IMG/VR virus record: IMGVR_UViG_3300034117_002447
Span: 124,001-188,000 of that record
DNA: 64,000 nt
Reading direction: 5' to 3' (one strand)
Shown here: positions 26,321 through 64,000 of the stretch, piece after piece
How the letters are laid out: each line of letters opens with the position of its first letter
Position numbering within the stretch: the stretch's first letter is position 1
Made by a program: the position numbers and the translations under genes
The notes under the pieces: model-generated
The model's database searches: none
Told to the model about the DNA's origin: nothing
What the model saw: only the letters and a program-made list of their open reading frames with translations

Positions 26321-27487
26321 TTAGTTACTTAGTGGTGCTTTAATTGATGGGTGTGATTGATAATCGACTAATTCAAAATCATCAATTAACCAATGTTCTG
26401 GCGTGAATGATGGTTCGTTTTTAAAATGCAATTTGATATTGCACTTAGGTAACTCAAATGGTTCTCTTGTACGGTACGGAATTTTATAAGCATCGTAGTA
26501 CTCAGACATACCTCCACCGAATGGCATCAGTTCATTAACTGCTTTGTTATATAAACGCAAGCTCATAGCATCCTTTAACATGGTCTCCCTTTCTTCTGGT
26601 GTATACTTTCTACCAATTTGTTCCTTTGCTTGTTCAATGTGGTTCAAATATAAATGAGTATCTCCTAAGTTTCCAATCAATTCATCAGGAATCATATTAA
26701 CTTCTTTTGCAATGATTTCTAGAAGAAGTCCGTAACTTGCAATATTGAACGGAAGGCCTAAGAATGTATCTACTGAACGTTGATTCCACATAAGGGAGAT
26801 TGCTCTGGTTGGAACATTCCATTGATTGATTTCAGAATGGGATAAGGTATCCGGCCCACCTCCATTATAGATTTGATTAAACATTTCTTGACTGACTAAG
26901 GATCTTCTTTCTTCTAAACTTAATTCTCTTGTATAACATTGAAATCCATAATGACAAGGTGGAAGTGTCATTTGGTCTAATTCACCTACATTCCATGCAT
27001 TTACCATTAATCGTCTTGAGTCTGGATTTGTTTTAAGGTCGTTGATTAGGTTTTGGATTTGGTCTACTCCTCCATCAAATATAGCGCCCCAATTTCTCCA
27101 TTGTCTACCATAAATTGGACCTAATTCACCCCAGGTCTTTGCTCTTAACGAATCATTTTTTATTGTATCAATAAACTCCATTATTGATAATGTATGGTCT
27201 GCTGTACTTTTGTATTTCTTATAAGCATCACCATCCCAAATATGACAATTATTGTCAACCAAATACTTAATATTTGTATCACCACGCAAGAACCACAATA
27301 ATTCAGTTACAATTGTTTTGAATGGCATCTTCTTAGTTGTAAGTAAAGGAAACCCTTCACTCATTTTATGACGGATCTGTCTACCGAATACTGAAATTGT
27401 TCCAGTACCGGTTCGGTCACTCTTCTCCACTCCATAATCTAAAATCGATTGAAGAAGATCGGTGTATTGTTTATCGAGTCGGTTCAT
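26321..27487 (-). CDS. thyA: Thymidylate synthase
   Basis: DRTGTGT, FPLLTTKK, ELLWFL, LPPCH, QRSVDTFLGLPFN, DTHLY; two in-frame insertions. Confidence 0.97.
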   Translation of the reverse strand: MNRLDKQYTDLLQSILDYGVEKSDRTGTGTISVFGRQIRHKMSEGFPLLTTKKMPFKTIVTELLWFLRGDTNIKYLVDNNCHIWDGDAYKKYKSTADHTLSIMEFIDTIKNDSLRAKTWGELGPIYGRQWRNWGAIFDGGVDQIQNLINDLKTNPDSRRLMVNAWNVGELDQMTLPPCHYGFQCYTRELSLEERRSLVSQEMFNQIYNGGGPDTLSHSEINQWNVPTRAISLMWNQRSVDTFLGLPFNIASYGLLLEIIAKEVNMIPDELIGNLGDTHLYLNHIEQAKEQIGRKYTPEERETMLKDAMSLRLYNKAVNELMPFGGGMSEYYDAYKIPYRTREPFELPKCNIKLHFKNEPSFTPEHWLIDDFELVDYQSHPSIKAPLSN

Positions 27488-28934: not shown

Positions 28935-28946
28935 GCTACTATTATA

Positions 28947-29753
28947 CTATAATTGTAGACTTGGAACCCAATGAGTGGTTCTTCCGTCTAAGGTTTCTTC
29001 CCTAACCACCAGATTGCCCAATAGATCGGTCTTTTGTGCATACACTTCAAAGTCAAAGGTAAATCCACCTGACTCACCAGTTACCTGTCGATAATTTCGG
29101 ATACTGGCGCCGCCTTGTGTATAGGAAGATCGCATGATTAATTTTCCCCAATTCCATAATCCACAAATATCTTCCTGAGTTAGGTCGCTGACCAGTCGAT
29201 ATGGGGATATTCTGCACCGGTAAAGCATTTCACATTTGATATAGTTACCGACCCCGGCAAATAGCGACTGGTCCATTAAAGCTTCAGCTACAGTTTTCTT
29301 CTGAGCCTTAGGTAACTCAACTTTTCTAACAAAATCGTACATGCTTGAGGTCTGATCGTTTAGCATATCAAGCCCCAAGCCGGCCAGTTTTTTTGCAAGA
29401 TCTGAAGTTTGCATGAACTTTAGTGTACCGAATCTGCGTTGATCAACGAAATATAACGAAGTGCCATCATCGAAGCCTATACGGAAATGGCTGTGTGGTC
29501 TCAAGTCAGTTGACCAGAACCCGCTCATTCCCAGTGTTATCCAGAGGCAGGTCTCGTCACTTAATTCAAGCCAAATGAATTTGCCTTTAACTCCACCGCC
29601 CACTACTCTGGTGGGTAAACTGGGGCTAACGACTAGGTCCGGTGCTCTCTTTAGGAAGCGGCCGCCTAATACTTCAAATTGAGTAACCGTCTTTCCTTTG
29701 GAAAATTCGGCAATTCCTTCGTACACTCTTCTACATTCAGGTCCTTCTGGCAT
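28947..29753 (-). CDS. mutM: Fpg/Nei-family DNA glycosylase/AP lyase
   Basis: N-terminal MPEGPE, KGKF, LGMSG, DQRRFG, H2TH LMDQSLFAGVGNYIKCE, GRTTHWVP..Q. Confidence 0.93.
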   Translation of the reverse strand: MPEGPECRRVYEGIAEFSKGKTVTQFEVLGGRFLKRAPDLVVSPSLPTRVVGGGVKGKFIWLELSDETCLWITLGMSGFWSTDLRPHSHFRIGFDDGTSLYFVDQRRFGTLKFMQTSDLAKKLAGLGLDMLNDQTSSMYDFVRKVELPKAQKKTVAEALMDQSLFAGVGNYIKCEMLYRCRISPYRLVSDLTQEDICGLWNWGKLIMRSSYTQGGASIRNYRQVTGESGGFTFDFEVYAQKTDLLGNLVVREETLDGRTTHWVPSLQL

Positions 29754-34130: not shown

Positions 34131-34142
34131 GTAGTTATTATA

Positions 34143-34415
34143 CTACAAAATTGTATTGGCTAGTTGAACCGATAACCAAATTCCTAAATATGACCCGGCT
34201 ACTGAGCCAGTAACATAACCAAACCATTGGTGTAGTGAATCTTCGCTCTTTGCAATTTTTCGGATTACGAAAAAATTTAGTGAAGCTATTGTAAAATCAC
34301 TAACTGCTGCTAAGTGATATTGAGTTTCAGCAACTGCTCTAAAATTTATGCATAAAATTCCATACAGTACAAGCTGAATTGCAAATAATAATAAACATTC
34401 TTTTAATTTTGTCAT
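34143..34415 (-). CDS. Small multi-TM membrane protein
   Basis: Three hydrophobic segments; GSVAGSYLGIWL. Confidence 0.75.
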   Translation of the reverse strand: MTKLKECLLLFAIQLVLYGILCINFRAVAETQYHLAAVSDFTIASLNFFVIRKIAKSEDSLHQWFGYVTGSVAGSYLGIWLSVQLANTIL

Positions 34416-39038: not shown

Positions 39039-39045
39039 TTAGTTA

Positions 39046-40044
39046 TTATACTAAAGCTGCCTTTATTGCTGCGATACTCTCAGTATACGTGACCGTATCG
39101 AATCTGTATGCTGTGTAAAAACCGGACCAAAGCGTGAGACCTCTTATTCCAACTGTCCAGGCCGCAAATTTTTCAGGCCATTTTTGGGTAGTACCCATAA
39201 TCTCGTCGATTTCCCCAGCAATACCTGTTAAAAAACCGCCAGATTTACCGGACGCTGTCCACATCTTGGCAAGTTGATCAGCGGAGAATTTTGGTGAAAT
39301 TAGCATGTACAAACCGTGCATAGCTGCACTATCAGCAAATGATGTAACTGTCTCATTTAGCTTAAGATCAACTGCGTCCATGATCATCTTAATATCAGCA
39401 TCTGACTCAACTGAGCCGGCTTTCTTGTATTTTGAGGTAATTGTGGTTACTTGTGTAGGTAAATCTCCACCGGTCAGCTTAATCCAATTGTCTGCGATAT
39501 TACCGTCACCTAGTAAAAAGCTGGCATTTGCTGCTTTTTCGATTCCTGCGAAGGAGCCGCCTAATGCTTTAACCTTATTGGTTTGAGCAGTAACCCATTT
39601 AATATGATCAGGAGTCCATGCCTTTCCGAATTTTTGAATCGATATTGTGATTAATGCAGCAATAAATTCATACATTTTACCCTTTGGGTCATATTCGGCA
39701 ATCTTATTAATGTCAATAGATGAGCCGGAAACTGGAGACGACGAGGTTGCCGCTGCTAGCTTAAGACTTCCTTTTACTGGCTTTAAGTCTGTTCCGATTT
39801 GATAAGCGACGTTAATCATGTCTTTTCCGTTATCGTGTTTAACCATGAACGTATAGTTACCAGCTGCCTTCTTTGATTCAACTTCATCCATGAATTGGTT
39901 CCATTGGTTTGCATAAGGTCCTCCATTTTGACCAGATAATAGTTTAGTTAAACCGTCAGCTGTTTGCATATCAGCGGCCTCATTGACCAGTAAGTAGCCA
40001 TGAGACTTTTTCTCTAAAATAAGCGCGTAATTTGAAATATTCAT
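39046..40044 (-). CDS. Hypothetical late protein
   Basis: 332 aa; N-terminus ...YLLVNEAAD. Confidence 0.8.
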   Translation of the reverse strand: MNISNYALILEKKSHGYLLVNEAADMQTADGLTKLLSGQNGGPYANQWNQFMDEVESKKAAGNYTFMVKHDNGKDMINVAYQIGTDLKPVKGSLKLAAATSSSPVSGSSIDINKIAEYDPKGKMYEFIAALITISIQKFGKAWTPDHIKWVTAQTNKVKALGGSFAGIEKAANASFLLGDGNIADNWIKLTGGDLPTQVTTITSKYKKAGSVESDADIKMIMDAVDLKLNETVTSFADSAAMHGLYMLISPKFSADQLAKMWTASGKSGGFLTGIAGEIDEIMGTTQKWPEKFAAWTVGIRGLTLWSGFYTAYRFDTVTYTESIAAIKAALV

Positions 40045-43410: not shown

Positions 43411-44469
43411 CTAAAGCGCCTTTGCGATTTCTCGAAGTATTTTAAAATAGTCACCCGATGAGCACTCGGAAAGGAACTTGCAAATCTCAAAGAAGTCATC
43501 TACTGTTTCAAATGTCATTGCTGAATGGTGGCCTTTCATATATGAAACTGGAATTACTCCAAAAATAATGGATTCGTACACTCTAGCTGGAGTAAAACCT
43601 GCCTGTAAATAAAGATCTTTACTTACATTAATTGATACGAGCGAGTTAGTGAATGAATTCCAAATCGCTTCACGATTCTGTCTAGGAATCAAGTACGCTC
43701 GATCTAATGAATTGATCCAATTAGTTAAGTCCTCAGTTTCTTTAGCCGATACAGTTAATTGAAAAGTATCACCGTTGAACATTTTCACATTTTCCACCTG
43801 AGTAATAATATCATTTATTATTGGGTTTTTTGTGTGACCTTCTTTATAATTATCAAATGACAGATTTCCGTAATATAGTAAGCTGTTAACAGTCGGCTTT
43901 ATTGAGTTCTCATGCACAGACAAACACGAATCTAAGAATTTTGATCCTATTCCTGGAATAGTTACTGAGACAATTTCTCTAGTTATCCCAAGATTCTCAA
44001 TCGTTTCTAAGAATTCCGGACTTAGAGATAAGTCAGTATCTAAAATAACGATGTCAGATGGAGCGTATCCGCAAGCCAATGCATGTTTTATAAATGTCTC
44101 AAATCTCTGAGCATCCTTTAACTTCTTTTGGAGAGTTGAAAGATTTCTGAATCTAGCCTTTAAGAAAATTTTATCGTATTCTTTATTTGACATATTCAGA
44201 AGAACATCCTCATAGCCAATTCGATACTCCTTGATTAAGTGTTGAGTAAAACCCTCAAACACCTGTCCAAGTATTCCGTCTGGATATATCGGCCTAACGG
44301 CAAATGCACGTTCTGTGTCCATGTAATTATAGAAATCGAAATTCTCGTTTCCGTATTTTTCAGAGATTGCATCAAGTAATCCAATTTGATAAAAAGTATG
44401 GCCTGGGATATTTTCTTCAAAAATTCCTAGTTCGCCAAAGTAGCAGTATAATGATTTTGTCTTTTCCAT
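43411..44469 (-). CDS. GT-B fold glycosyltransferase-like protein (T4 beta-glucosyltransferase-like)
   Basis: LLYYGN..., NSLVSINVSKDLY...FTPARVYESIIFGVIPV resembles the GT-B C-terminal R(V/I)(Y/W)E motif. Confidence 0.6.
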   Translation of the reverse strand: MEKTKSLYCYFGELGIFEENIPGHTFYQIGLLDAISEKYGNENFDFYNYMDTERAFAVRPIYPDGILGQVFEGFTQHLIKEYRIGYEDVLLNMSNKEYDKIFLKARFRNLSTLQKKLKDAQRFETFIKHALACGYAPSDIVILDTDLSLSPEFLETIENLGITREIVSVTIPGIGSKFLDSCLSVHENSIKPTVNSLLYYGNLSFDNYKEGHTKNPIINDIITQVENVKMFNGDTFQLTVSAKETEDLTNWINSLDRAYLIPRQNREAIWNSFTNSLVSINVSKDLYLQAGFTPARVYESIIFGVIPVSYMKGHHSAMTFETVDDFFEICKFLSECSSGDYFKILREIAKAL

Positions 44470-44846
44470 TCTAAGTATTTTACTAGAACTCCATCATTGG
44501 GTTCTATGTCAAGTCTATTATTGTAAAAAATATCCCATGAGTCTGCTGCATACTGCCCAATTCCATGAAGTTCTCGAGGATGATCCCACTCTTTTGTAAT
44601 CCACTCAGTACTAAACTTAATTAATGATCGTGACCTGCGATTATAAAAACCAAGAGGCCGAATTACTTCGGCCAATTGAATAGGATCAGCGTTTGATAAC
44701 TCAGCCGCGTCTCGATATGTGTTAAATAGTTCTTCTCTTATTCGGTCTACCTGTTTTCTACGAGTACAATTCAATAGAATACAGCAGACTTGCGACTTCC
44801 ACGGGTCATCATGATAAATTTCCTGTAAAAGTTCGTATGGGCTCAT
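44427..44846 (-). CDS. MBD4-like HhH-GPD DNA glycosylase
   Basis: DPWK..VCCILLN.T, IRPLGFYNRR, LHGIGQYAADSW.IF. Confidence 0.88.
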   Translation of the reverse strand: MSPYELLQEIYHDDPWKSQVCCILLNCTRRKQVDRIREELFNTYRDAAELSNADPIQLAEVIRPLGFYNRRSRSLIKFSTEWITKEWDHPRELHGIGQYAADSWDIFYNNRLDIEPNDGVLVKYLEWKRQNHYTATLAN

Positions 44847-45658
44847 TAACGTCCTTTAAATCCTGCGAAGTGAGTAATAAAGTGTTTGCCGTTTATTGTT
44901 TTAGGGTTAACGAAGAGTTCTCCAAAGTTAGCTCTAAAAATATCTAGGATCTCTGTAAATTTCGCTGAGCGATTTTCCAATAACCAGCTGTAGTGAAAAT
45001 GGTATTCAACTATGAATAACCTGATTTGATCTAAACTTTCTTGATTTAAAGCTTTAATCATATCGTATTCAAGACCTTCAATATCCATCTTGATCGCAGT
45101 GATACCCTTTTCTTTGATTATAGTGTTAATATTCTCAGCAGGTACGGTGGTGACCTGACGACCTCTAATGTGATGGACGCTATGCTTACCTGAATCTTGT
45201 GATAAGTAGAATTCAACTTCAGTTGAATCGTCCGCGACAATTGCTTTTTCGATAATTTCACAACGATCTTCAACACTATTCATTTGAAGGTTTTGTTCTA
45301 GGAACTCCACGTTATTATGGAAAGGTTCGTATGAGTATACTTTCTTTACTTTTGGAAATTGCGTTAGTAAACGAGTTGCAAATATGCCAATGTGGCCGCC
45401 TGCATCCAACCAAACGTCTTCGTGGTCCAAGTCTTCTAAGAGCATAGGGCCGCCGTTTTGTGCATAATGCGGTATGAACAGAGGTTTGAAGTATTCTCCA
45501 CCAGTAGGTTTAGTAGAGATATTCTGAGACACGTTAAATTTAATCTCTTCAGAAGATCTAACTAAGAATTGATAATCGTGATATTTGGTCTTCTTTTCGA
45601 AAACCTGAAGGGTGCCATTTTCGCGAGCCTCTTCAATTGAGCATAATACGTCAGCCAT
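44846..45658 (-). CDS. FkbM-family SAM-dependent methyltransferase
   Basis: LDAGGHIGIF, SYEPFHNN, IKMDIEGLE, IVEYH. Confidence 0.9.
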   Translation of the reverse strand: MADVLCSIEEARENGTLQVFEKKTKYHDYQFLVRSSEEIKFNVSQNISTKPTGGEYFKPLFIPHYAQNGGPMLLEDLDHEDVWLDAGGHIGIFATRLLTQFPKVKKVYSYEPFHNNVEFLEQNLQMNSVEDRCEIIEKAIVADDSTEVEFYLSQDSGKHSVHHIRGRQVTTVPAENINTIIKEKGITAIKMDIEGLEYDMIKALNQESLDQIRLFIVEYHFHYSWLLENRSAKFTEILDIFRANFGELFVNPKTINGKHFITHFAGFKGR

Positions 45659-45693
45659 TTGTAAGTTTCTTTTAGTAATTATACTACAGATAC

Positions 45694-45957
45694 TTACTTT
45701 TGGTCTACGGCAACGTCCTTTGTTTTAATTGAGAGTTCGTCTGGATTCTTTGGATCAGGTCCTGAAGCTTGATAATCGGTAAATTTACCAGTATCGAGTT
45801 TATCAATCTCATCAGGTTTTACTGATTTATATTGATTGTCTGCTCCCATTACTTTATAGGTTTGACCTACTGGATCGATTCCAACAATTGTAGCACTTTG
45901 CCCAGACTTTAACATGACCTTTTGGCCAGTTACGTACTTAGCTGCGGTCGCGGACAC
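45694..45957 (-). CDS. KOW/SH3-like ORF with GTG start only; probably a -1 frameshift extension of the upstream gene
   Basis: GQKVMLKSGQSATIVGIDP..QTYKV; frame is open back to the A9 run at 45987-45995. Confidence 0.6.
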   Translation of the reverse strand: MSATAAKYVTGQKVMLKSGQSATIVGIDPVGQTYKVMGADNQYKSVKPDEIDKLDTGKFTDYQASGPDPKNPDELSIKTKDVAVDQK

Positions 45958-62299: not shown

Positions 62300-62666
62300 G
62301 GGGATGACCGGATTTGACAGGAATTATCGGTTACACCTGCACGCCGAGGAAGATGCTAAGACTCGTTAAAATGTATTAAAACTATAAGTGGCAACACTAA
62401 TTTCTGGAGTCTAGTTAACGAAAGCGTTAACGCTCCTGTTACTGAAGAGCTTTTAGCTGCATAAGTGACCAAGCGGCAACTGCTTGACTAACCCAAAGTT
62501 GCAAAACCAGCATGGCGTAACGGCCAAGTCGAACCGTTACCGACTTTAGCTTTAAGTCGTTAAAGAATAAGATATTTGGTCCAGTTAGAAAATGGGACTA
62601 AGCGTGTAAACGAAGGTCTAATTAGAGGTTTTTTGGACGAGGGTTCGAATCCCTCCATCTCCACCA
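62300..62666 (+). ncRNA. ssrA: tmRNA; predicted tag (A)GNTNFWSLVNESVNAPVTEELLAA* at 62390-62464
   Basis: 5' GGGGATG / 3' CATCTCC-A-CCA with G3.U70; GATTTGAC; T-arm GAGGG-TTCGAAT-CCCTC; GCACGC/GCGTGT pairing; tag ends LAA. Confidence 0.95.
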
Positions 62667-62760: not shown

Positions 62761-64000
62761 ATGGCAAATGGAGTAAAGTATTCTACTGGCTCAACCCCAG
62801 CAGGTTGCCTTAGAAAGGGCAATATGTTACTCGCGGTCGGGCAGCAAGATTACGGGACGTCCTTTTATTCGGGAGTTAATCCACCGGCTGGCGGATACAC
62901 GATTTACGTTAATAAGGCAACTTCTGGTCCAAGCATACACTGCCCTCGAACTGATGCTGAACTGATTAGATTAACTAATCAAATCGCTGGAGCAAATTAC
63001 ACAACAACAAGTCAGTGCTTTAGCTATTTAGCCTCGCAATCGGATAAGATAATAGTCGATTTAGCGTATCCTGATATTGCGACCTCTGGTTTACTTTTAA
63101 AGTTAGACTCAAGTTTTACAGCGTCATATCCTAAAACTGGAACTACTTGGTATGACATAAGCGGAAATAGTTCAAATGGAGTAATTTATAATGGCCCAAT
63201 ATGGAATTCGAATGGGTATTTTGAATTTGATGGGATCGATGACTATGTTGATACAAATAAAACTTTTCAATTTACTAGAGACAGTCAATTTTCAGTTTGT
63301 GGATTTATAAACATTAGAGATCATAAATCTAGAGCAAGCGCTGCTGCTGGTATTATAGGAAAGGGCCATTGGTACTCTAATAGTTGGGATGTTTGGTTAA
63401 GTAACGATAATCGAATTTACTTTGAAACTAATGGAAATAGTAATCCAAATAACGTTCATTTCCTATATAGTGATCCGTTAACAATAGACCGCTGGTATTT
63501 CTTCACCGCTATATATGAAAATGGTAGGAAACTTCTCTATCTCAACCACTCTCAATATGAAAACTTTGATGGAGGAGTCGGTGATTTCACGAACAATAAT
63601 TCTGTATTAATTTCTAGGCGATATGATGACGTATATAGAAGCTTAATGGGATACGGGGCTAACTACTCAATATACGATAGGCAACTAGAGGAAACTGAAG
63701 TATTTCAAAACTATTACGGTGGAAATATTGCGCTAGACGGATTAGTCTTATCCGTAGATGGTGCAAATATTGTTTCTTATCCCGGAACCGGTTCTACTTG
63801 GTACGATATGACTCAAAGTGAGTACTCTGTTACTAATTGCAATATACAAAAGAGTAAAAATAACTACTATTCCTTATGGAGTAATGGAAATGACGCTGAT
63901 GTTGCATCTTCCCCAATTCTAAACAATGACTATCATTCGGTAGAACTTCTGCTAATGTTTAAAGGCTCAGCGACCTATCCAAACGGATACACTGGCAGTT
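62761..64000 (+). CDS. LamG/ConA-like domain fibre protein (runs off window end; absent from ORF track)
   Basis: ATG 62761, open to end; YPKTGTTWYDISGN, FEFDGIDDYV, WYFFTAIY, repeated SYPGTGSTWYD; late box at 62730. Confidence 0.85.
   Translation, partial: MANGVKYSTGSTPAGCLRKGNMLLAVGQQDYGTSFYSGVNPPAGGYTIYVNKATSGPSIHCPRTDAELIRLTNQIAGANYTTTSQCFSYLASQSDKIIVDLAYPDIATSGLLLKLDSSFTASYPKTGTTWYDISGNSSNGVIYNGPIWNSNGYFEFDGIDDYVDTNKTFQFTRDSQFSVCGFINIRDHKSRASAAAGIIGKGHWYSNSWDVWLSNDNRIYFETNGNSNPNNVHFLYSDPLTIDRWYFFTAIYENGRKLLYLNHSQYENFDGGVGDFTNNNSVLISRRYDDVYRSLMGYGANYSIYDRQLEETEVFQNYYGGNIALDGLVLSVDGANIVSYPGTGSTWYDMTQSEYSVTNCNIQKSKNNYYSLWSNGNDADVASSPILNNDYHSVELLLMFKGSATYPNGYTGS

What the first reader, a model, noticed from the sequence alone, without database searches (positions are those of the whole stretch)
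43411..45686. Coupled FkbM methyltransferase - MBD4 glycosylase - GT-B glycosyltransferase operon: candidate DNA hypermodification
Seen: three overlapping ORFs under one TAGTATAAT box (45678). Known: T4 BGT-fold enzymes glycosylate 5hmC, MBD4 excises T/U/5hmU from G mismatches left by deamination of modified C, and FkbM enzymes O-methylate sugars or small acceptors. Inference: the phage may install a methylated sugar on a DNA base with a dedicated repair glycosylase, or use the glycosylase as an editing step. No hydroxymethylase is visible in the window, and thyA keeps the dUMP-specifying Asn (GLPFN). A capsid-protein glycan is an alternative target.
Basis: partly seen in the sequence, partly recalled or inferred. 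Interest (0 to 1): 0.7.

Follow-up and report, generated by a model that had tools for sequence, protein, structure and literature searches.

The report
Phage DNA sugar-tagging gene trio
A 271-kb freshwater-type jumbo phage carries a promoter-led trio of genes (a methyltransferase, a DNA-repair glycosylase and a glycosyltransferase of a new family) that, with a hydroxymethyl-cytosine synthase found elsewhere in its genome, most likely puts a sugar, perhaps a methylated one, on its own DNA.

Summary
Three minus-strand ORFs overlap by 1 nt and 43 nt. They lie behind a TAGTATAAT box that is a recurrent promoter motif of this phage.

- **Identities.** ORF1 is an FkbM-family methyltransferase. ORF2 is a stand-alone MBD4-type HhH-GPD glycosylase domain. 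ORF3 has no Pfam or PHROG hit but folds (pLDDT 92.5) as a GT-B glycosyltransferase. Its family is small: 52 representatives among 1.84 billion proteins.
- **The missing hydroxymethylase exists.** About 105 kb away, outside the window, a second thymidylate-synthase paralogue carries the 5hm-dCMP-synthase signature. It overlaps a dCMP deaminase gene.
- **Distant family members point to DNA.** Homologues at about 25% identity lie inside nucleotide and DNA clusters. The order there is dUTPase_2, thymidylate-kinase-like, UDG-superfamily glycosylase, GT, then hydroxymethylase-type synthase or DNA polymerase.
- **Conclusion on the GT.** It is most probably a DNA 5hmC glycosyltransferase.
- **Open points.** The FkbM acceptor is inferred only; a methylated DNA sugar would be new. 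The glycosylase is optional: its presence changes at least 9 times on the GT tree, and it also occurs in plain repair contexts.
- **Rival.** The same genome has a collagen/GT4-FkbM cluster that looks like protein glycosylation, so a non-DNA target is not excluded.

The parts
45678..45707 (-). Promoter-like site. The -10 box TAGTATAAT is at 45678-45686, with a -35-like TAGACC 18 nt upstream.
   Evidence: Found by the consensus scan. The motif occurs 9 times in the window against 0.92 expected and 21 times in the genome. Most copies face a nearby gene, including the genes for DNA ligase, NUDIX and an endonuclease.
44846..45658 (-). FkbM-family SAM-dependent methyltransferase, 270 aa.
   Evidence: PF05050 at 2.2e-13, TIGR01444 at 4.7e-21 and phrog_8156 at 1.7e-18. 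The AF2 model has pLDDT 93 and a class I methyltransferase fold; FkbM 2py6 scores Z 12.5, no better than TYW2 or Trm5. Invariant residues include D85, G87 and G91.
44427..44846 (-). Stand-alone MBD4-type HhH-GPD DNA glycosylase domain, 139 aa, with no methyl-CpG-binding domain.
   Evidence: MBD4 glycosylase domain 4ew4 matches at 4e-29 over residues 2-136; PF00730 at 1.9e-8. The equivalents of catalytic Asp560 (D102) and essential Gln449 (Q8) are kept. Tyr540 is Trp and Arg468 is Cys.
43411..44469 (-). GT-B fold glycosyltransferase of a small, unnamed phage family, 352 aa. It is the candidate DNA 5hmC glycosyltransferase.
   Evidence: No Pfam, PHROG, NCBIfam or PDB sequence hit. The family has 52 representatives. 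The AF2 model has pLDDT 92.5. It shows a GT-B fold, with T4 BGT at Foldseek E 4.5e-6 and Z 15.4 and T4 AGT at Z 14.6. The gene context of distant members points to DNA metabolism.
26321..27487 (-). Context only: a bona fide thymidylate synthase (GLPFN, dUMP-type) with large inserts.
   Evidence: NF002496 scores 331 bits against a cut-off of 325; alignment. It contrasts with the second paralogue outside the window, at G000:C1:107604-108494.

Best explanation
The phage runs a T4-like, pre-replicative cytosine hypermodification pathway, and this operon is its post-replicative decoration step.

**Proposed steps**
1. Outside the window, a thymidylate-synthase paralogue with a dCMP-hydroxymethylase signature makes 5hm-dCMP. 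A MazG/dUTPase_2-type NTP pyrophosphohydrolase next to the DNA polymerase is a candidate for keeping dCTP out, which is inference.
2. 5hmC is polymerised into phage DNA.
3. The 352-aa GT-B enzyme (43411-44469) transfers a sugar from a nucleotide-sugar to the 5-hydroxymethyl group in DNA. This is inferred from genomic context at family level.
4. The FkbM methyltransferase, made just before it on the same transcript, O-methylates that sugar. This is inferred from adjacency and from the GT-FkbM theme elsewhere in the genome.
5. The MBD4-type glycosylase between them is an accessory base-excision enzyme for uracil-type bases (U, T, 5hmU) that arise from deaminated C or 5hmC. It is useful but dispensable.

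**Shown:** gene identities, folds, overlaps, the promoter motif, synteny, the active-site signatures and the neighbourhoods.

**Inferred:** the acceptor and the sugar of the GT, the acceptor of FkbM, and the substrate of the glycosylase.
For: 1. **A 5hmC source exists.** The genome holds two TS-family genes.
   - The second, G000:C1:107604-108494, scores far below every ThyA equivalog cut-off (62 against 327 bits).
   - Its best solved relatives are MilA CMP hydroxymethylase (9e-18) and T4 dCMP hydroxymethylase (1.2e-13), ahead of true synthases at about 1e-10.
   - It has Cys146 kept, Leu143 to Asp, Asp169 kept and Asn177 to Asp. PMC13326640 gives this as the 5hm-dCMP-synthase pattern, as opposed to the methyl or 5-hydroxy patterns.
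   - It overlaps a dCMP deaminase gene and lies beside SbcCD-like and DnaB-like genes.
   - It is conserved at 52-72% identity in four near-complete relatives.
   - An NTP pyrophosphohydrolase (phrog_173, 3.9e-17) lies next to DNA polymerase B.
2. **GT family context.** In five distinct distant loci (L127, L128, L129/L034, L133, L134) the GT homologue is overlapped at its start by a UDG-superfamily gene. It is followed directly by a TS gene with the same hydroxymethylase signature, or by a DNA polymerase. dUTPase_2, a thymidylate-kinase-like/HAD-like gene and dCMP deaminase lie close by. Three shorter contigs agree in part: L035 and L036 have a UDG-superfamily gene 0.2-0.6 kb upstream, L035 has dUTPase_2 downstream, and L033 and L036 have DNA polymerase B downstream.
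3. **Fold.** It is GT-B. The Foldseek E-value to T4 BGT is 4.5e-6. Experimentally validated phage GT-B DNA glycosyltransferases fall in the same range, 1e-5 to 1e-7 (bioRxiv 10.1101/2023.12.21.572611). That paper also finds GT-B pathways mostly tied to ThyS-type enzymes.
4. **No other DNA-GT candidate found.** No T4 BGT Pfam match, and no TET/JBP or C5 DNA methyltransferase route.
5. **Promoter class.** The operon's promoter motif also precedes the DNA ligase, NUDIX and endonuclease genes.
6. **Linkage.** FkbM-GT adjacency holds in 54 of 58 distinct loci down to 38% GT identity. A GT4-FkbM fusion elsewhere in the genome shows that this phage does pair sugar transfer with FkbM domains.
Against: - There is no chemical evidence; everything rests on sequence, fold and neighbourhood.
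- The fold does not single out DNA enzymes. TarM, BshA, tetrahydrobiopterin glucosyltransferase and WaaG score as high as or higher than T4 BGT.
- In this phage the GT is about 105 kb from the hydroxymethylase. It is flanked by large proteins of unknown function.
- The protein is acidic (pI 5.1).
- No dNMP kinase was identified in the genome. PF02223 finds nothing, and there is only a weak P-loop candidate at C1:78486-79094.
- All jumbo-clade loci share broad synteny, so FkbM-GT linkage there could be inherited gene order rather than functional coupling.
- The only other FkbM domain in the genome sits in what looks like a collagen-protein glycosylation cluster.
- The glycosylase family also occurs without any GT.
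Confidence: 0.55

Rival explanations
1. The FkbM-GT pair builds a methylated glycan on something other than DNA, such as a virion protein (possibly one of the unknown large neighbours), a host envelope component or a small molecule. On this reading the glycosylase is merely a neighbouring repair gene.
For: - FkbM enzymes are classically O-methyltransferases of sugars and secondary metabolites (established knowledge of the family).
- The same genome has a cluster of a collagen-repeat protein, a 2OG-Fe(II) oxygenase, a GT4-FkbM fusion, a methyltransferase and a methyltransferase-GT9 fusion. It looks like protein hydroxylation and glycosylation.
- Top structural matches include wall teichoic acid, LPS and thiol-glycoside enzymes.
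- The flanking genes p646, p512, p756, p334 and p332 have no DNA-metabolism signature.
- GT352 is acidic.
Against: - Distant members of this GT family are embedded between a UDG-like glycosylase and a hydroxymethylase-type TS or a DNA polymerase, not among structural or glycan genes.
- A 5hmC-type synthase in the genome otherwise has no partner GT.
- A DNA glycosylase gene is translationally overlapped with the GT.
- The promoter class is shared with the ligase, NUDIX and endonuclease genes.
Confidence: 0.25
2. The glycosylase and the GT form a functional pair. The logic would be restriction-modification-like or quality control: the glycosylase attacks DNA lacking the proper decoration or carrying deaminated bases (host, competitor-phage or mis-made phage DNA), while the GT protects correctly made phage DNA.
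For: - Two unrelated glycosylase superfamilies occupy the slot immediately upstream of, and overlapping, this GT family. They are UDG-like in the distant clade and MBD4-like HhH-GPD in the jumbo clade.
- Both keep uracil-type recognition residues. These are Gln449-equivalent Q8 in 111 of 111 sequences and the FTN and HPS motifs.
- Host defence glycosylases that target glucosyl-5hmC show that glycosylases are used in this arms race (PMC11078745, listed).
Against: - The glycosylase is absent from this slot in 27 of 58 distinct loci. Its state changes at least 9 times on the GT tree, and it is not found elsewhere in five relatives' records, all incomplete at 29-84%.
- The family also occurs with UvdE and MazG in cyanophage-like contigs and alone elsewhere.
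- 10 of 111 family members lack the catalytic Asp.
- In the distant clade the whole block is DNA metabolism, so UDG adjacency may reflect only a conserved replication module.
Confidence: 0.1
3. FkbM270 does not act on the sugar. It would methylate another acceptor (the 5-hydroxymethyl oxygen itself, a nucleobase, a protein or a metabolite), and the GT acts on DNA independently.
For: - The structural neighbours of FkbM270 are generic class I methyltransferases. The top matches are the nucleic-acid enzymes TYW2 and Trm5, level with FkbM 2py6, and there are weak Pfam hits to TRM5-TYW2.
- Four of 58 distinct loci have the GT without FkbM.
Against: - Adjacency is kept down to 38% GT identity, and FkbM state changes only 3 times on the tree.
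- A GT4-FkbM fusion occurs in the same genome.
- To my knowledge no FkbM-family member is known to act on nucleic-acid bases.
Confidence: 0.1

Closest known systems
T-even phage 5hmC pathway: gp42 dCMP hydroxymethylase, gp56 dCTPase and the alpha- and beta-glucosyltransferases
   Same: - A TS-family enzyme with an Asp at the base-specifying position and an acidic residue at the Leu143 position.
- dCMP deaminase and a separate ThyA.
- An NTP pyrophosphohydrolase.
- A GT-B enzyme of about 350 aa. By Foldseek it is as similar to T4 BGT as validated phage DNA GT-B enzymes are.
   Different: - No sequence relationship to BGT or AGT; PF09198 does not match.
- The GT belongs to its own small family.
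- The GT is 105 kb from the hydroxymethylase.
- An FkbM methyltransferase and an MBD4-type glycosylase are co-transcribed with it. T4 has neither.
- No gp1-type kinase was recognised.
Phage GT-B DNA glycosyltransferases of ThyS- or TET-associated clusters (Pyle et al., Cell Rep 2024; bioRxiv 10.1101/2023.12.21.572611), and the 5hoC arabinosylation clusters of RB69/DLP3 (PMC13326640)
   Same: - A GT-B fold with only fold-level likeness to T4 BGT.
- Association with a thymidylate-synthase homologue, dCMP deaminase and DNA polymerase.
- Nucleotide kinase and HAD-type genes nearby in the distant members.
   Different: - The TS signature here keeps Asp169, so it is the 5hmC type, not the 5hoC type.
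- Those papers do not mention FkbM, O-methylated sugars or a partner glycosylase.
- Sequence relationship to their GTs could not be tested, because I had no references to their sequences.
Mammalian MBD4 glycosylase domain (PDB 4ew4, 4e9e and others)
   Same: - Full-length alignment at E 4e-29.
- The catalytic Asp, the essential Gln, the HhH Gly-rich hairpin and the Leu506 equivalent are kept.
   Different: - No methyl-CpG-binding domain.
- Tyr540 is Trp in 108 of 111 phage homologues.
- The wedge Arg468 is Cys, Arg or Gln, and a conserved Arg (110 of 111) sits three positions later.
- Tyr562 is mostly Trp.
- 10 of 111 homologues lack the catalytic Asp.
Sugar O-methylation by FkbM-family enzymes in glycan pathways, and collagen glycosylation in giant viruses
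   Same: - FkbM domains paired with glycosyltransferases.
- The same genome has a collagen, oxygenase and GT4-FkbM cluster.
   Different: Here a stand-alone FkbM gene sits with a DNA glycosylase and a GT whose family context is DNA metabolism.

Membership tests
FkbM methyltransferase family (PF05050 / TIGR01444) | The profile match is above the curated cut-off. | tested here: met
   PF05050 scores 51.1 bits against a cut-off of 22.7. TIGR01444 scores 75.7 bits against 37.7.
FkbM methyltransferase family (PF05050 / TIGR01444) | Class I SAM-binding Rossmann fold with a Gly-rich motif I. | tested here: met
   The AF2 model has pLDDT 93. FkbM 2py6 scores Z 12.5 and many class I methyltransferases score Z 11-12.7. 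D85, G87 and G91 are invariant.
FkbM methyltransferase family (PF05050 / TIGR01444) | O-methylation of a hydroxyl group on a sugar or secondary metabolite. | not testable with these tools
   The acceptor cannot be read from sequence or fold.
MBD4 (HhH-GPD mismatch glycosylase) | Homology to the MBD4 glycosylase domain over its whole length. | tested here: met
   4ew4 at E 4e-29; query residues 2-136 align with chain residues 9-144.
MBD4 (HhH-GPD mismatch glycosylase) | The catalytic Asp560 and the essential Gln449. | tested here: met
   D102 and Q8 align to them. Q8 is kept in 111 of 111 homologues and D102 in 101 of 111.
MBD4 (HhH-GPD mismatch glycosylase) | Pocket Tyr540 and wedge Arg468. 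| tested here: not met
   W82 replaces Tyr540 and C27 replaces Arg468. R30 is conserved instead.
MBD4 (HhH-GPD mismatch glycosylase) | An N-terminal methyl-CpG-binding domain. | tested here: not met
   The protein is only 139 aa and is covered entirely by the glycosylase domain.
GT-B fold glycosyltransferases | Two Rossmann-like domains, with nucleotide-sugar binding residues in the C-terminal domain. | tested here: met
   The AF2 model has pLDDT 92.5, with alternating strands and helices in two halves. Foldseek probability is 1.0 to many GT-B enzymes and VIA Z is 15-17. R263, K284, R296 and E299 are invariant in the C-terminal half.
T4 beta-glucosyltransferase family (GT63, PF09198) | Sequence-profile membership. 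| tested here: not met
   GT352 has no significant Pfam match (only one sub-threshold hit to an unrelated family). PF09198 finds nothing in the genome. A profile of the family finds no PDB chain at E up to 10.
T4 beta-glucosyltransferase family (GT63, PF09198) | Structural likeness that stands above other GT-B enzymes. | tested here: inconclusive
   BGT scores Z 15.4 and AGT Z 14.6, but TarM, BshA and BGluT score Z 16-17. BGT has the best TM score (0.50) among the top Foldseek hits.
Phage DNA (5hmC) glycosyltransferases, as a functional class | Co-occurrence with a 5hm-pyrimidine-producing enzyme and DNA-metabolism genes. | tested here: met
   A TS paralogue with the hydroxymethylase signature is in the genome and in relatives. 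Distant GT homologues lie adjacent to such TS genes, DNA polymerases, UDG and dUTPase_2.
Phage DNA (5hmC) glycosyltransferases, as a functional class | Transfer of a sugar to 5hmC in DNA. | not testable with these tools
   This needs an enzyme assay or nucleoside mass spectrometry.
dCMP hydroxymethylase (T4 gp42 type). Applies to the paralogue outside the window. | Catalytic Cys146, Asn177 to Asp, Leu143 to Asp or Glu, and Asp169 kept (E. coli ThyA numbering; criteria from PMC13326640). | tested here: met
   The motifs are KDFVC and RSNDAVWGTPTD. The criteria were read.

The most novel reading that the evidence does not exclude
This phage lineage decorates 5-hydroxymethylcytosine in its DNA with an O-methylated sugar. 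A previously unrecognised DNA glycosyltransferase family would add the sugar, and a co-transcribed FkbM methyltransferase would add the methyl. That GT family has, in different phage lineages, independently recruited two unrelated uracil-type DNA glycosylases (UDG-like and MBD4-like) to the gene slot overlapping its start. This points to a functional glycosylase-glycosyltransferase partnership in hypermodified genomes.
Probability: 0.25. Interest if true: 0.8.

Novelty: new variant of a known kind. Interest (0 to 1): 0.62.

Why it matters
Sugar-decorated cytosines are a main way for phages to escape restriction enzymes and CRISPR, and they are in turn targets of host defence glycosylases and type IV nucleases.

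- **A new enzyme family.** The GT escapes all profile libraries yet sits in 5hmC pathways, so it would widen the search space for DNA hypermodifications in metagenomes.
- **A new kind of DNA chemistry.** I found no report of a methylated sugar on DNA; the two hypermodification papers I searched mention neither FkbM nor O-methylated sugars, and a literature search returned no paper on FkbM in DNA hypermodification. It could resist defence enzymes that recognise glucosyl-5hmC.
- **A testable idea about genome upkeep.** Two unrelated uracil-type glycosylases recur next to this GT. This suggests that heavily modified genomes need, or exploit, their own base-excision step.

Tried and rejected
- **Public phage records.** The locus DNA (blastn) and the GT protein (tblastn) found nothing in INPHARED phage records.
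- **Sequence profiles for the GT.** Nothing in Pfam, PHROGs, NCBIfam or PDB.
- **Alternative routes to 5hmC.** No TET/JBP and no C5 DNA methyltransferase in the genome.
- **Other genome searches.** No UDG-superfamily gene, no Pfam thymidylate kinase and no T4 BGT match in the genome.
- **dNMP kinase.** A P-loop ORF at C1:78486-79094 has a Tmk-like layout but no PHROG or PDB support. It is left as a weak candidate only.
- **GT352 with HhH139 complex.** The complex prediction gave 'no answer' (score 0.00). It is not evidence either way.
- **FkbM270 fold search.** Only generic class I methyltransferases, with no clue to the acceptor.
- **Flanking genes.** Protein Atlas look-ups of p646 and p756 gave nothing usable.
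- **Overall charge of the GT family.** pI ranges from 4.9 to 9.3, so it is uninformative.
- **Rejected: the TS paralogue as a 5-hydroxy-dCMP synthase.** The diagnostic Asp169-to-Asn change is absent.
- **Rejected: the glycosylase as an obligatory partner of the GT.** It is too often absent.
Full report
**1. What is there**

The window is the reverse strand of bases 193352-257351 of a 270,962-bp viral record with direct terminal repeats, rated 100% complete. It is a jumbo myovirus-like phage: it has T4-type large terminase, baseplate wedge, tail-sheath stabiliser, major head protein and prohead protease genes.

On the minus strand lie three ORFs: 44846-45658 (270 aa), 44427-44846 (139 aa) and 43411-44469 (352 aa). 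The first stop and second start share a base (TAATG). The second and third genes overlap by 43 nt. The third gene's start is backed by the N-termini of its homologues.

TAGTATAAT sits at 45678-45686, 19 nt before the first ATG. The motif occurs 9 times in the window against 0.92 expected and 21 times in the genome. Most copies point at a nearby downstream gene. About seven lie exactly 7 nt before an ATG, and several have a G[GT]AAACC-like element upstream. It precedes the DNA ligase, NUDIX and an endonuclease gene.

**2. The three proteins**

- **ORF1** is an FkbM-family methyltransferase: PF05050 at 2e-13, TIGR01444 at 4.7e-21 and phrog_8156. Its AF2 model (pLDDT 93) is a class I methyltransferase. 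The solved FkbM protein 2py6 (Z 12.5) ranks level with TYW2, Trm5 and CbiT, so the fold says nothing about the acceptor.
- **ORF2** aligns over its full length to the MBD4 glycosylase domain (4ew4, E 4e-29). JGI names its relatives 'MBD4' or 'endonuclease III'.
  - I used the residues described for human MBD4 in PMC3479182. The catalytic Asp560 and the essential Gln449 are kept (D102, Q8).
  - Tyr540 is Trp, the wedge Arg468 is Cys, and Gly471 is Arg. Across 111 phage homologues, Q8 is invariant, W82 is found in 108 of 111 and R30 in 110 of 111. Ten homologues have Ala at the catalytic Asp.
  - There is no methyl-CpG-binding domain. It is thus an MBD4-like glycosylase domain of a distinct phage subfamily, probably still reading a uracil-type base.
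- **ORF3** has no significant hit in Pfam, PHROGs, NCBIfam or PDB sequences. Only 52 cluster representatives among 1.84 billion proteins match it.
  - With an alignment of 32 members, AF2 gives pLDDT 92.5. The model is a GT-B glycosyltransferase: Foldseek probability 1.0 and VIA Z of 15-17 to TarM, BshA, BGluT, WaaG and PimA. T4 BGT scores Z 15.4 (Foldseek E 4.5e-6, TM 0.50) and T4 AGT scores Z 14.6.
  - The likeness to BGT is therefore fold-level only. It is, however, the same level reported for experimentally validated phage GT-B DNA glycosyltransferases, E 1e-5 to 1e-7.
  - Invariant residues of the family include P22, L103, K104, R106, F107, N109 and S111; also D119, D144, D146, G201, N202, R263, K284, R296 and E299. 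G23 and H24 are nearly invariant.

**3. The missing hydroxymethylase**

The whole genome, however, has a second TS-family gene at C1:107604-108494.

- It fails every ThyA equivalog cut-off (62 against 327 bits), whereas the window's thyA passes.
- Its best solved relatives are MilA CMP hydroxymethylase (9e-18) and T4 dCMP hydroxymethylase (1.2e-13).
- In E. coli numbering it has Cys146, Leu143 to Asp, Asp169 kept and Asn177 to Asp. Lee et al. (PMC13326640) give these as diagnostic residues. Asn177Asp means a dCMP substrate. An acidic residue at 143 means a hydroxymethyl rather than a methyl product. Asp169Asn would mean the 5-hydroxy product. The signature here is that of a 5hm-dCMP synthase.
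- The gene overlaps a dCMP deaminase gene and lies with SbcCD-like and DnaB-like genes.
- An NTP pyrophosphohydrolase of the MazG/dUTPase_2 kind lies next to DNA polymerase B, about 10 kb away.
- Four near-complete relatives keep the paralogue at 52-72% identity.
- No TET/JBP and no C5 DNA methyltransferase is present.

**4. What the GT family's neighbours say**

*Jumbo clade.* Eighty related viral loci were fetched. The order p646, p512, (p87), FkbM, [HhH], GT, p756 ... NUDIX, ligase is conserved down to 38% GT identity.

Among 58 distinct GT sequences, FkbM is adjacent in 54 and the glycosylase in 31. On the GT tree the glycosylase state changes at least 9 times and the FkbM state 3 times. 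Where the glycosylase is missing from the slot, it was not found elsewhere in five relatives' records, which are 29-84% complete. Two loci have the glycosylase and the GT without FkbM, and two have the GT alone. Because this clade shares broad synteny, linkage within it is weak evidence of function.

*Distant members (about 25% identity to GT352, 25-43% among themselves).* These are more telling.

- In five distinct loci (L127, L128, L129/L034, L133, L134) a UDG-superfamily gene overlaps the GT start by 4-8 nt.
- The GT is then followed at once by a TS gene with the same hydroxymethylase signature (L127, L129, L134) or by a DNA polymerase (L128, L133).
- dUTPase_2, a thymidylate-kinase-like/HAD-like gene (phrog_761 at 3e-7 and 2e-3; Pfam hits below threshold) and dCMP deaminase lie alongside.
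- Three shorter contigs agree in part. L035 and L036 have a UDG-superfamily gene 0.2-0.6 kb upstream. L035 has dUTPase_2 downstream, and L033 and L036 have DNA polymerase B downstream.

This is a compact 5hmC-type pathway cluster with the GT inside it. It is the strongest argument that the family glycosylates DNA. The UDG-like proteins carry GIAPG, FTN and HPS motifs.

**5. What speaks against, and the rival**

- The same genome has a separate cluster at C1:180353-190169, outside the window. It holds an 870-aa collagen-repeat protein, a 2OG-Fe(II) oxygenase, a 958-aa GT4-FkbM fusion, a methyltransferase and a methyltransferase-GT9 fusion. This looks like hydroxylation and glycosylation of a collagen-like fibre. 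It shows that FkbM domains in this phage can serve protein glycans.
- The immediate neighbours of the trio are large proteins of unknown function.
- GT352 is acidic.
- No dNMP kinase was securely found.
- The MBD4-like family also occurs beside UvdE and MazG in cyanophage-like contigs, and alone next to a ligase gene. It is therefore a general phage repair gene, not one tied to hypermodification.
- A complex prediction for the GT with the glycosylase returned no verdict.

**6. Most likely mechanism**

Shown:
- the gene identities, folds and overlaps;
- the promoter class;
- the TS signature;
- the family neighbourhoods.

Inferred:
- 5hm-dCMP is made pre-replicatively and incorporated into phage DNA.
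- GT352 transfers a sugar to 5hmC in DNA.
- FkbM270 methylates that sugar.
- The MBD4-like enzyme removes uracil-type bases, such as 5hmU or U from deaminated 5hmC or C.

The glycosylase is a helpful but dispensable accessory.

My estimates:
- about 0.65 that the GT acts on DNA;
- about 0.55 for the pathway as a whole;
- about 0.3 for the methylated sugar in particular.

**7. Comparison and novelty**

The kind is known: ThyS-type pre-replicative 5hmC followed by GT-B glycosylation, as in T4 and in Pyle et al. 2024, and in a related form in Lee et al. 2026.

New here:
- a GT family invisible to profile libraries;
- a co-transcribed FkbM methyltransferase; the two hypermodification papers I searched mention neither FkbM nor O-methylated sugars, and a literature search returned no paper on FkbM in DNA hypermodification;
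- recurrent placement of two unrelated uracil-type glycosylases at the GT's start.

I rate it a new variant of a known kind, with interest 0.62.

Noticed in passing
window 62300-62666 (+): A phage-encoded tmRNA gene predicted by ARAGORN. The tag peptide is GNTNFWSLVNESVNAPVTEELLAA.
   Followed up: no
outside the window: G000:C1:180353-190169 (L126:5353-15169): A cluster of a collagen-repeat protein (870 aa), a 2OG-Fe(II) oxygenase, a GT4-FkbM fusion (958 aa), a Methyltransf_24 protein and a methyltransferase-GT9 fusion (910 aa). It is probably a module that hydroxylates and glycosylates a collagen-like fibre.
   Followed up: partly
outside the window: G000:C1:107604-108494 and 107141-107635 (L031): A second thymidylate-synthase paralogue with the dCMP-hydroxymethylase signature. 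It overlaps a dCMP deaminase gene.
   Followed up: yes
window 26321-27487 (-): thyA is 388 aa with large insertions. One is about 70 residues between the catalytic Cys and the RSxD motif. It still passes the NCBIfam thymidylate synthase cut-off.
   Followed up: partly
genome-wide, for example window 28941-28949, 34137-34145 and 39045-39053 (-): About seven of the 21 TAGTATAAT boxes sit exactly 7 nt before an ATG. This suggests leaderless or near-leaderless transcripts for a class of genes that includes NUDIX, an endonuclease and probably DNA ligase, whose true start may be 47 nt inside the listed ORF.
   Followed up: partly
L122:15209-15700 (-) = G000:C1:110209-110700: A 163-aa SET-domain ORF (PF00856, 5.8e-6) lies between the SbcC-like and SbcD-like genes.
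   Followed up: no
protein family of window 44427-44846: Ten of 111 phage MBD4-like homologues carry Ala in place of the catalytic Asp. Tyr540 is Trp in 108 of 111.
   Followed up: partly
L139:4591-6399 and L140:3304-5112: In cyanophage-like contigs (peptide deformylase, HSP20, Thy1) the same MBD4-like gene follows MazG and the UV-damage endonuclease UvdE. That is a plain repair context.
   Followed up: no
L128:16413-17720 (+): A hydroxymethylase-signature TS homologue of 435 aa. Its N-terminal part carries NUMOD3 motifs, which are typical of homing endonucleases.
   Followed up: no
L123:1830-3212 (-) = G000:C1:116829-118211: The DNA polymerase B ORF is only 460 aa, covering the exonuclease domain and the start of the polymerase domain. 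The polymerase may be split between genes.
   Followed up: no
window 62761-63999 (+) and L126:16865-17845 (-): Two ORFs with Laminin_G_3 / concanavalin-like lectin domains lie near the tail genes. They are possible receptor-binding proteins.
   Followed up: no
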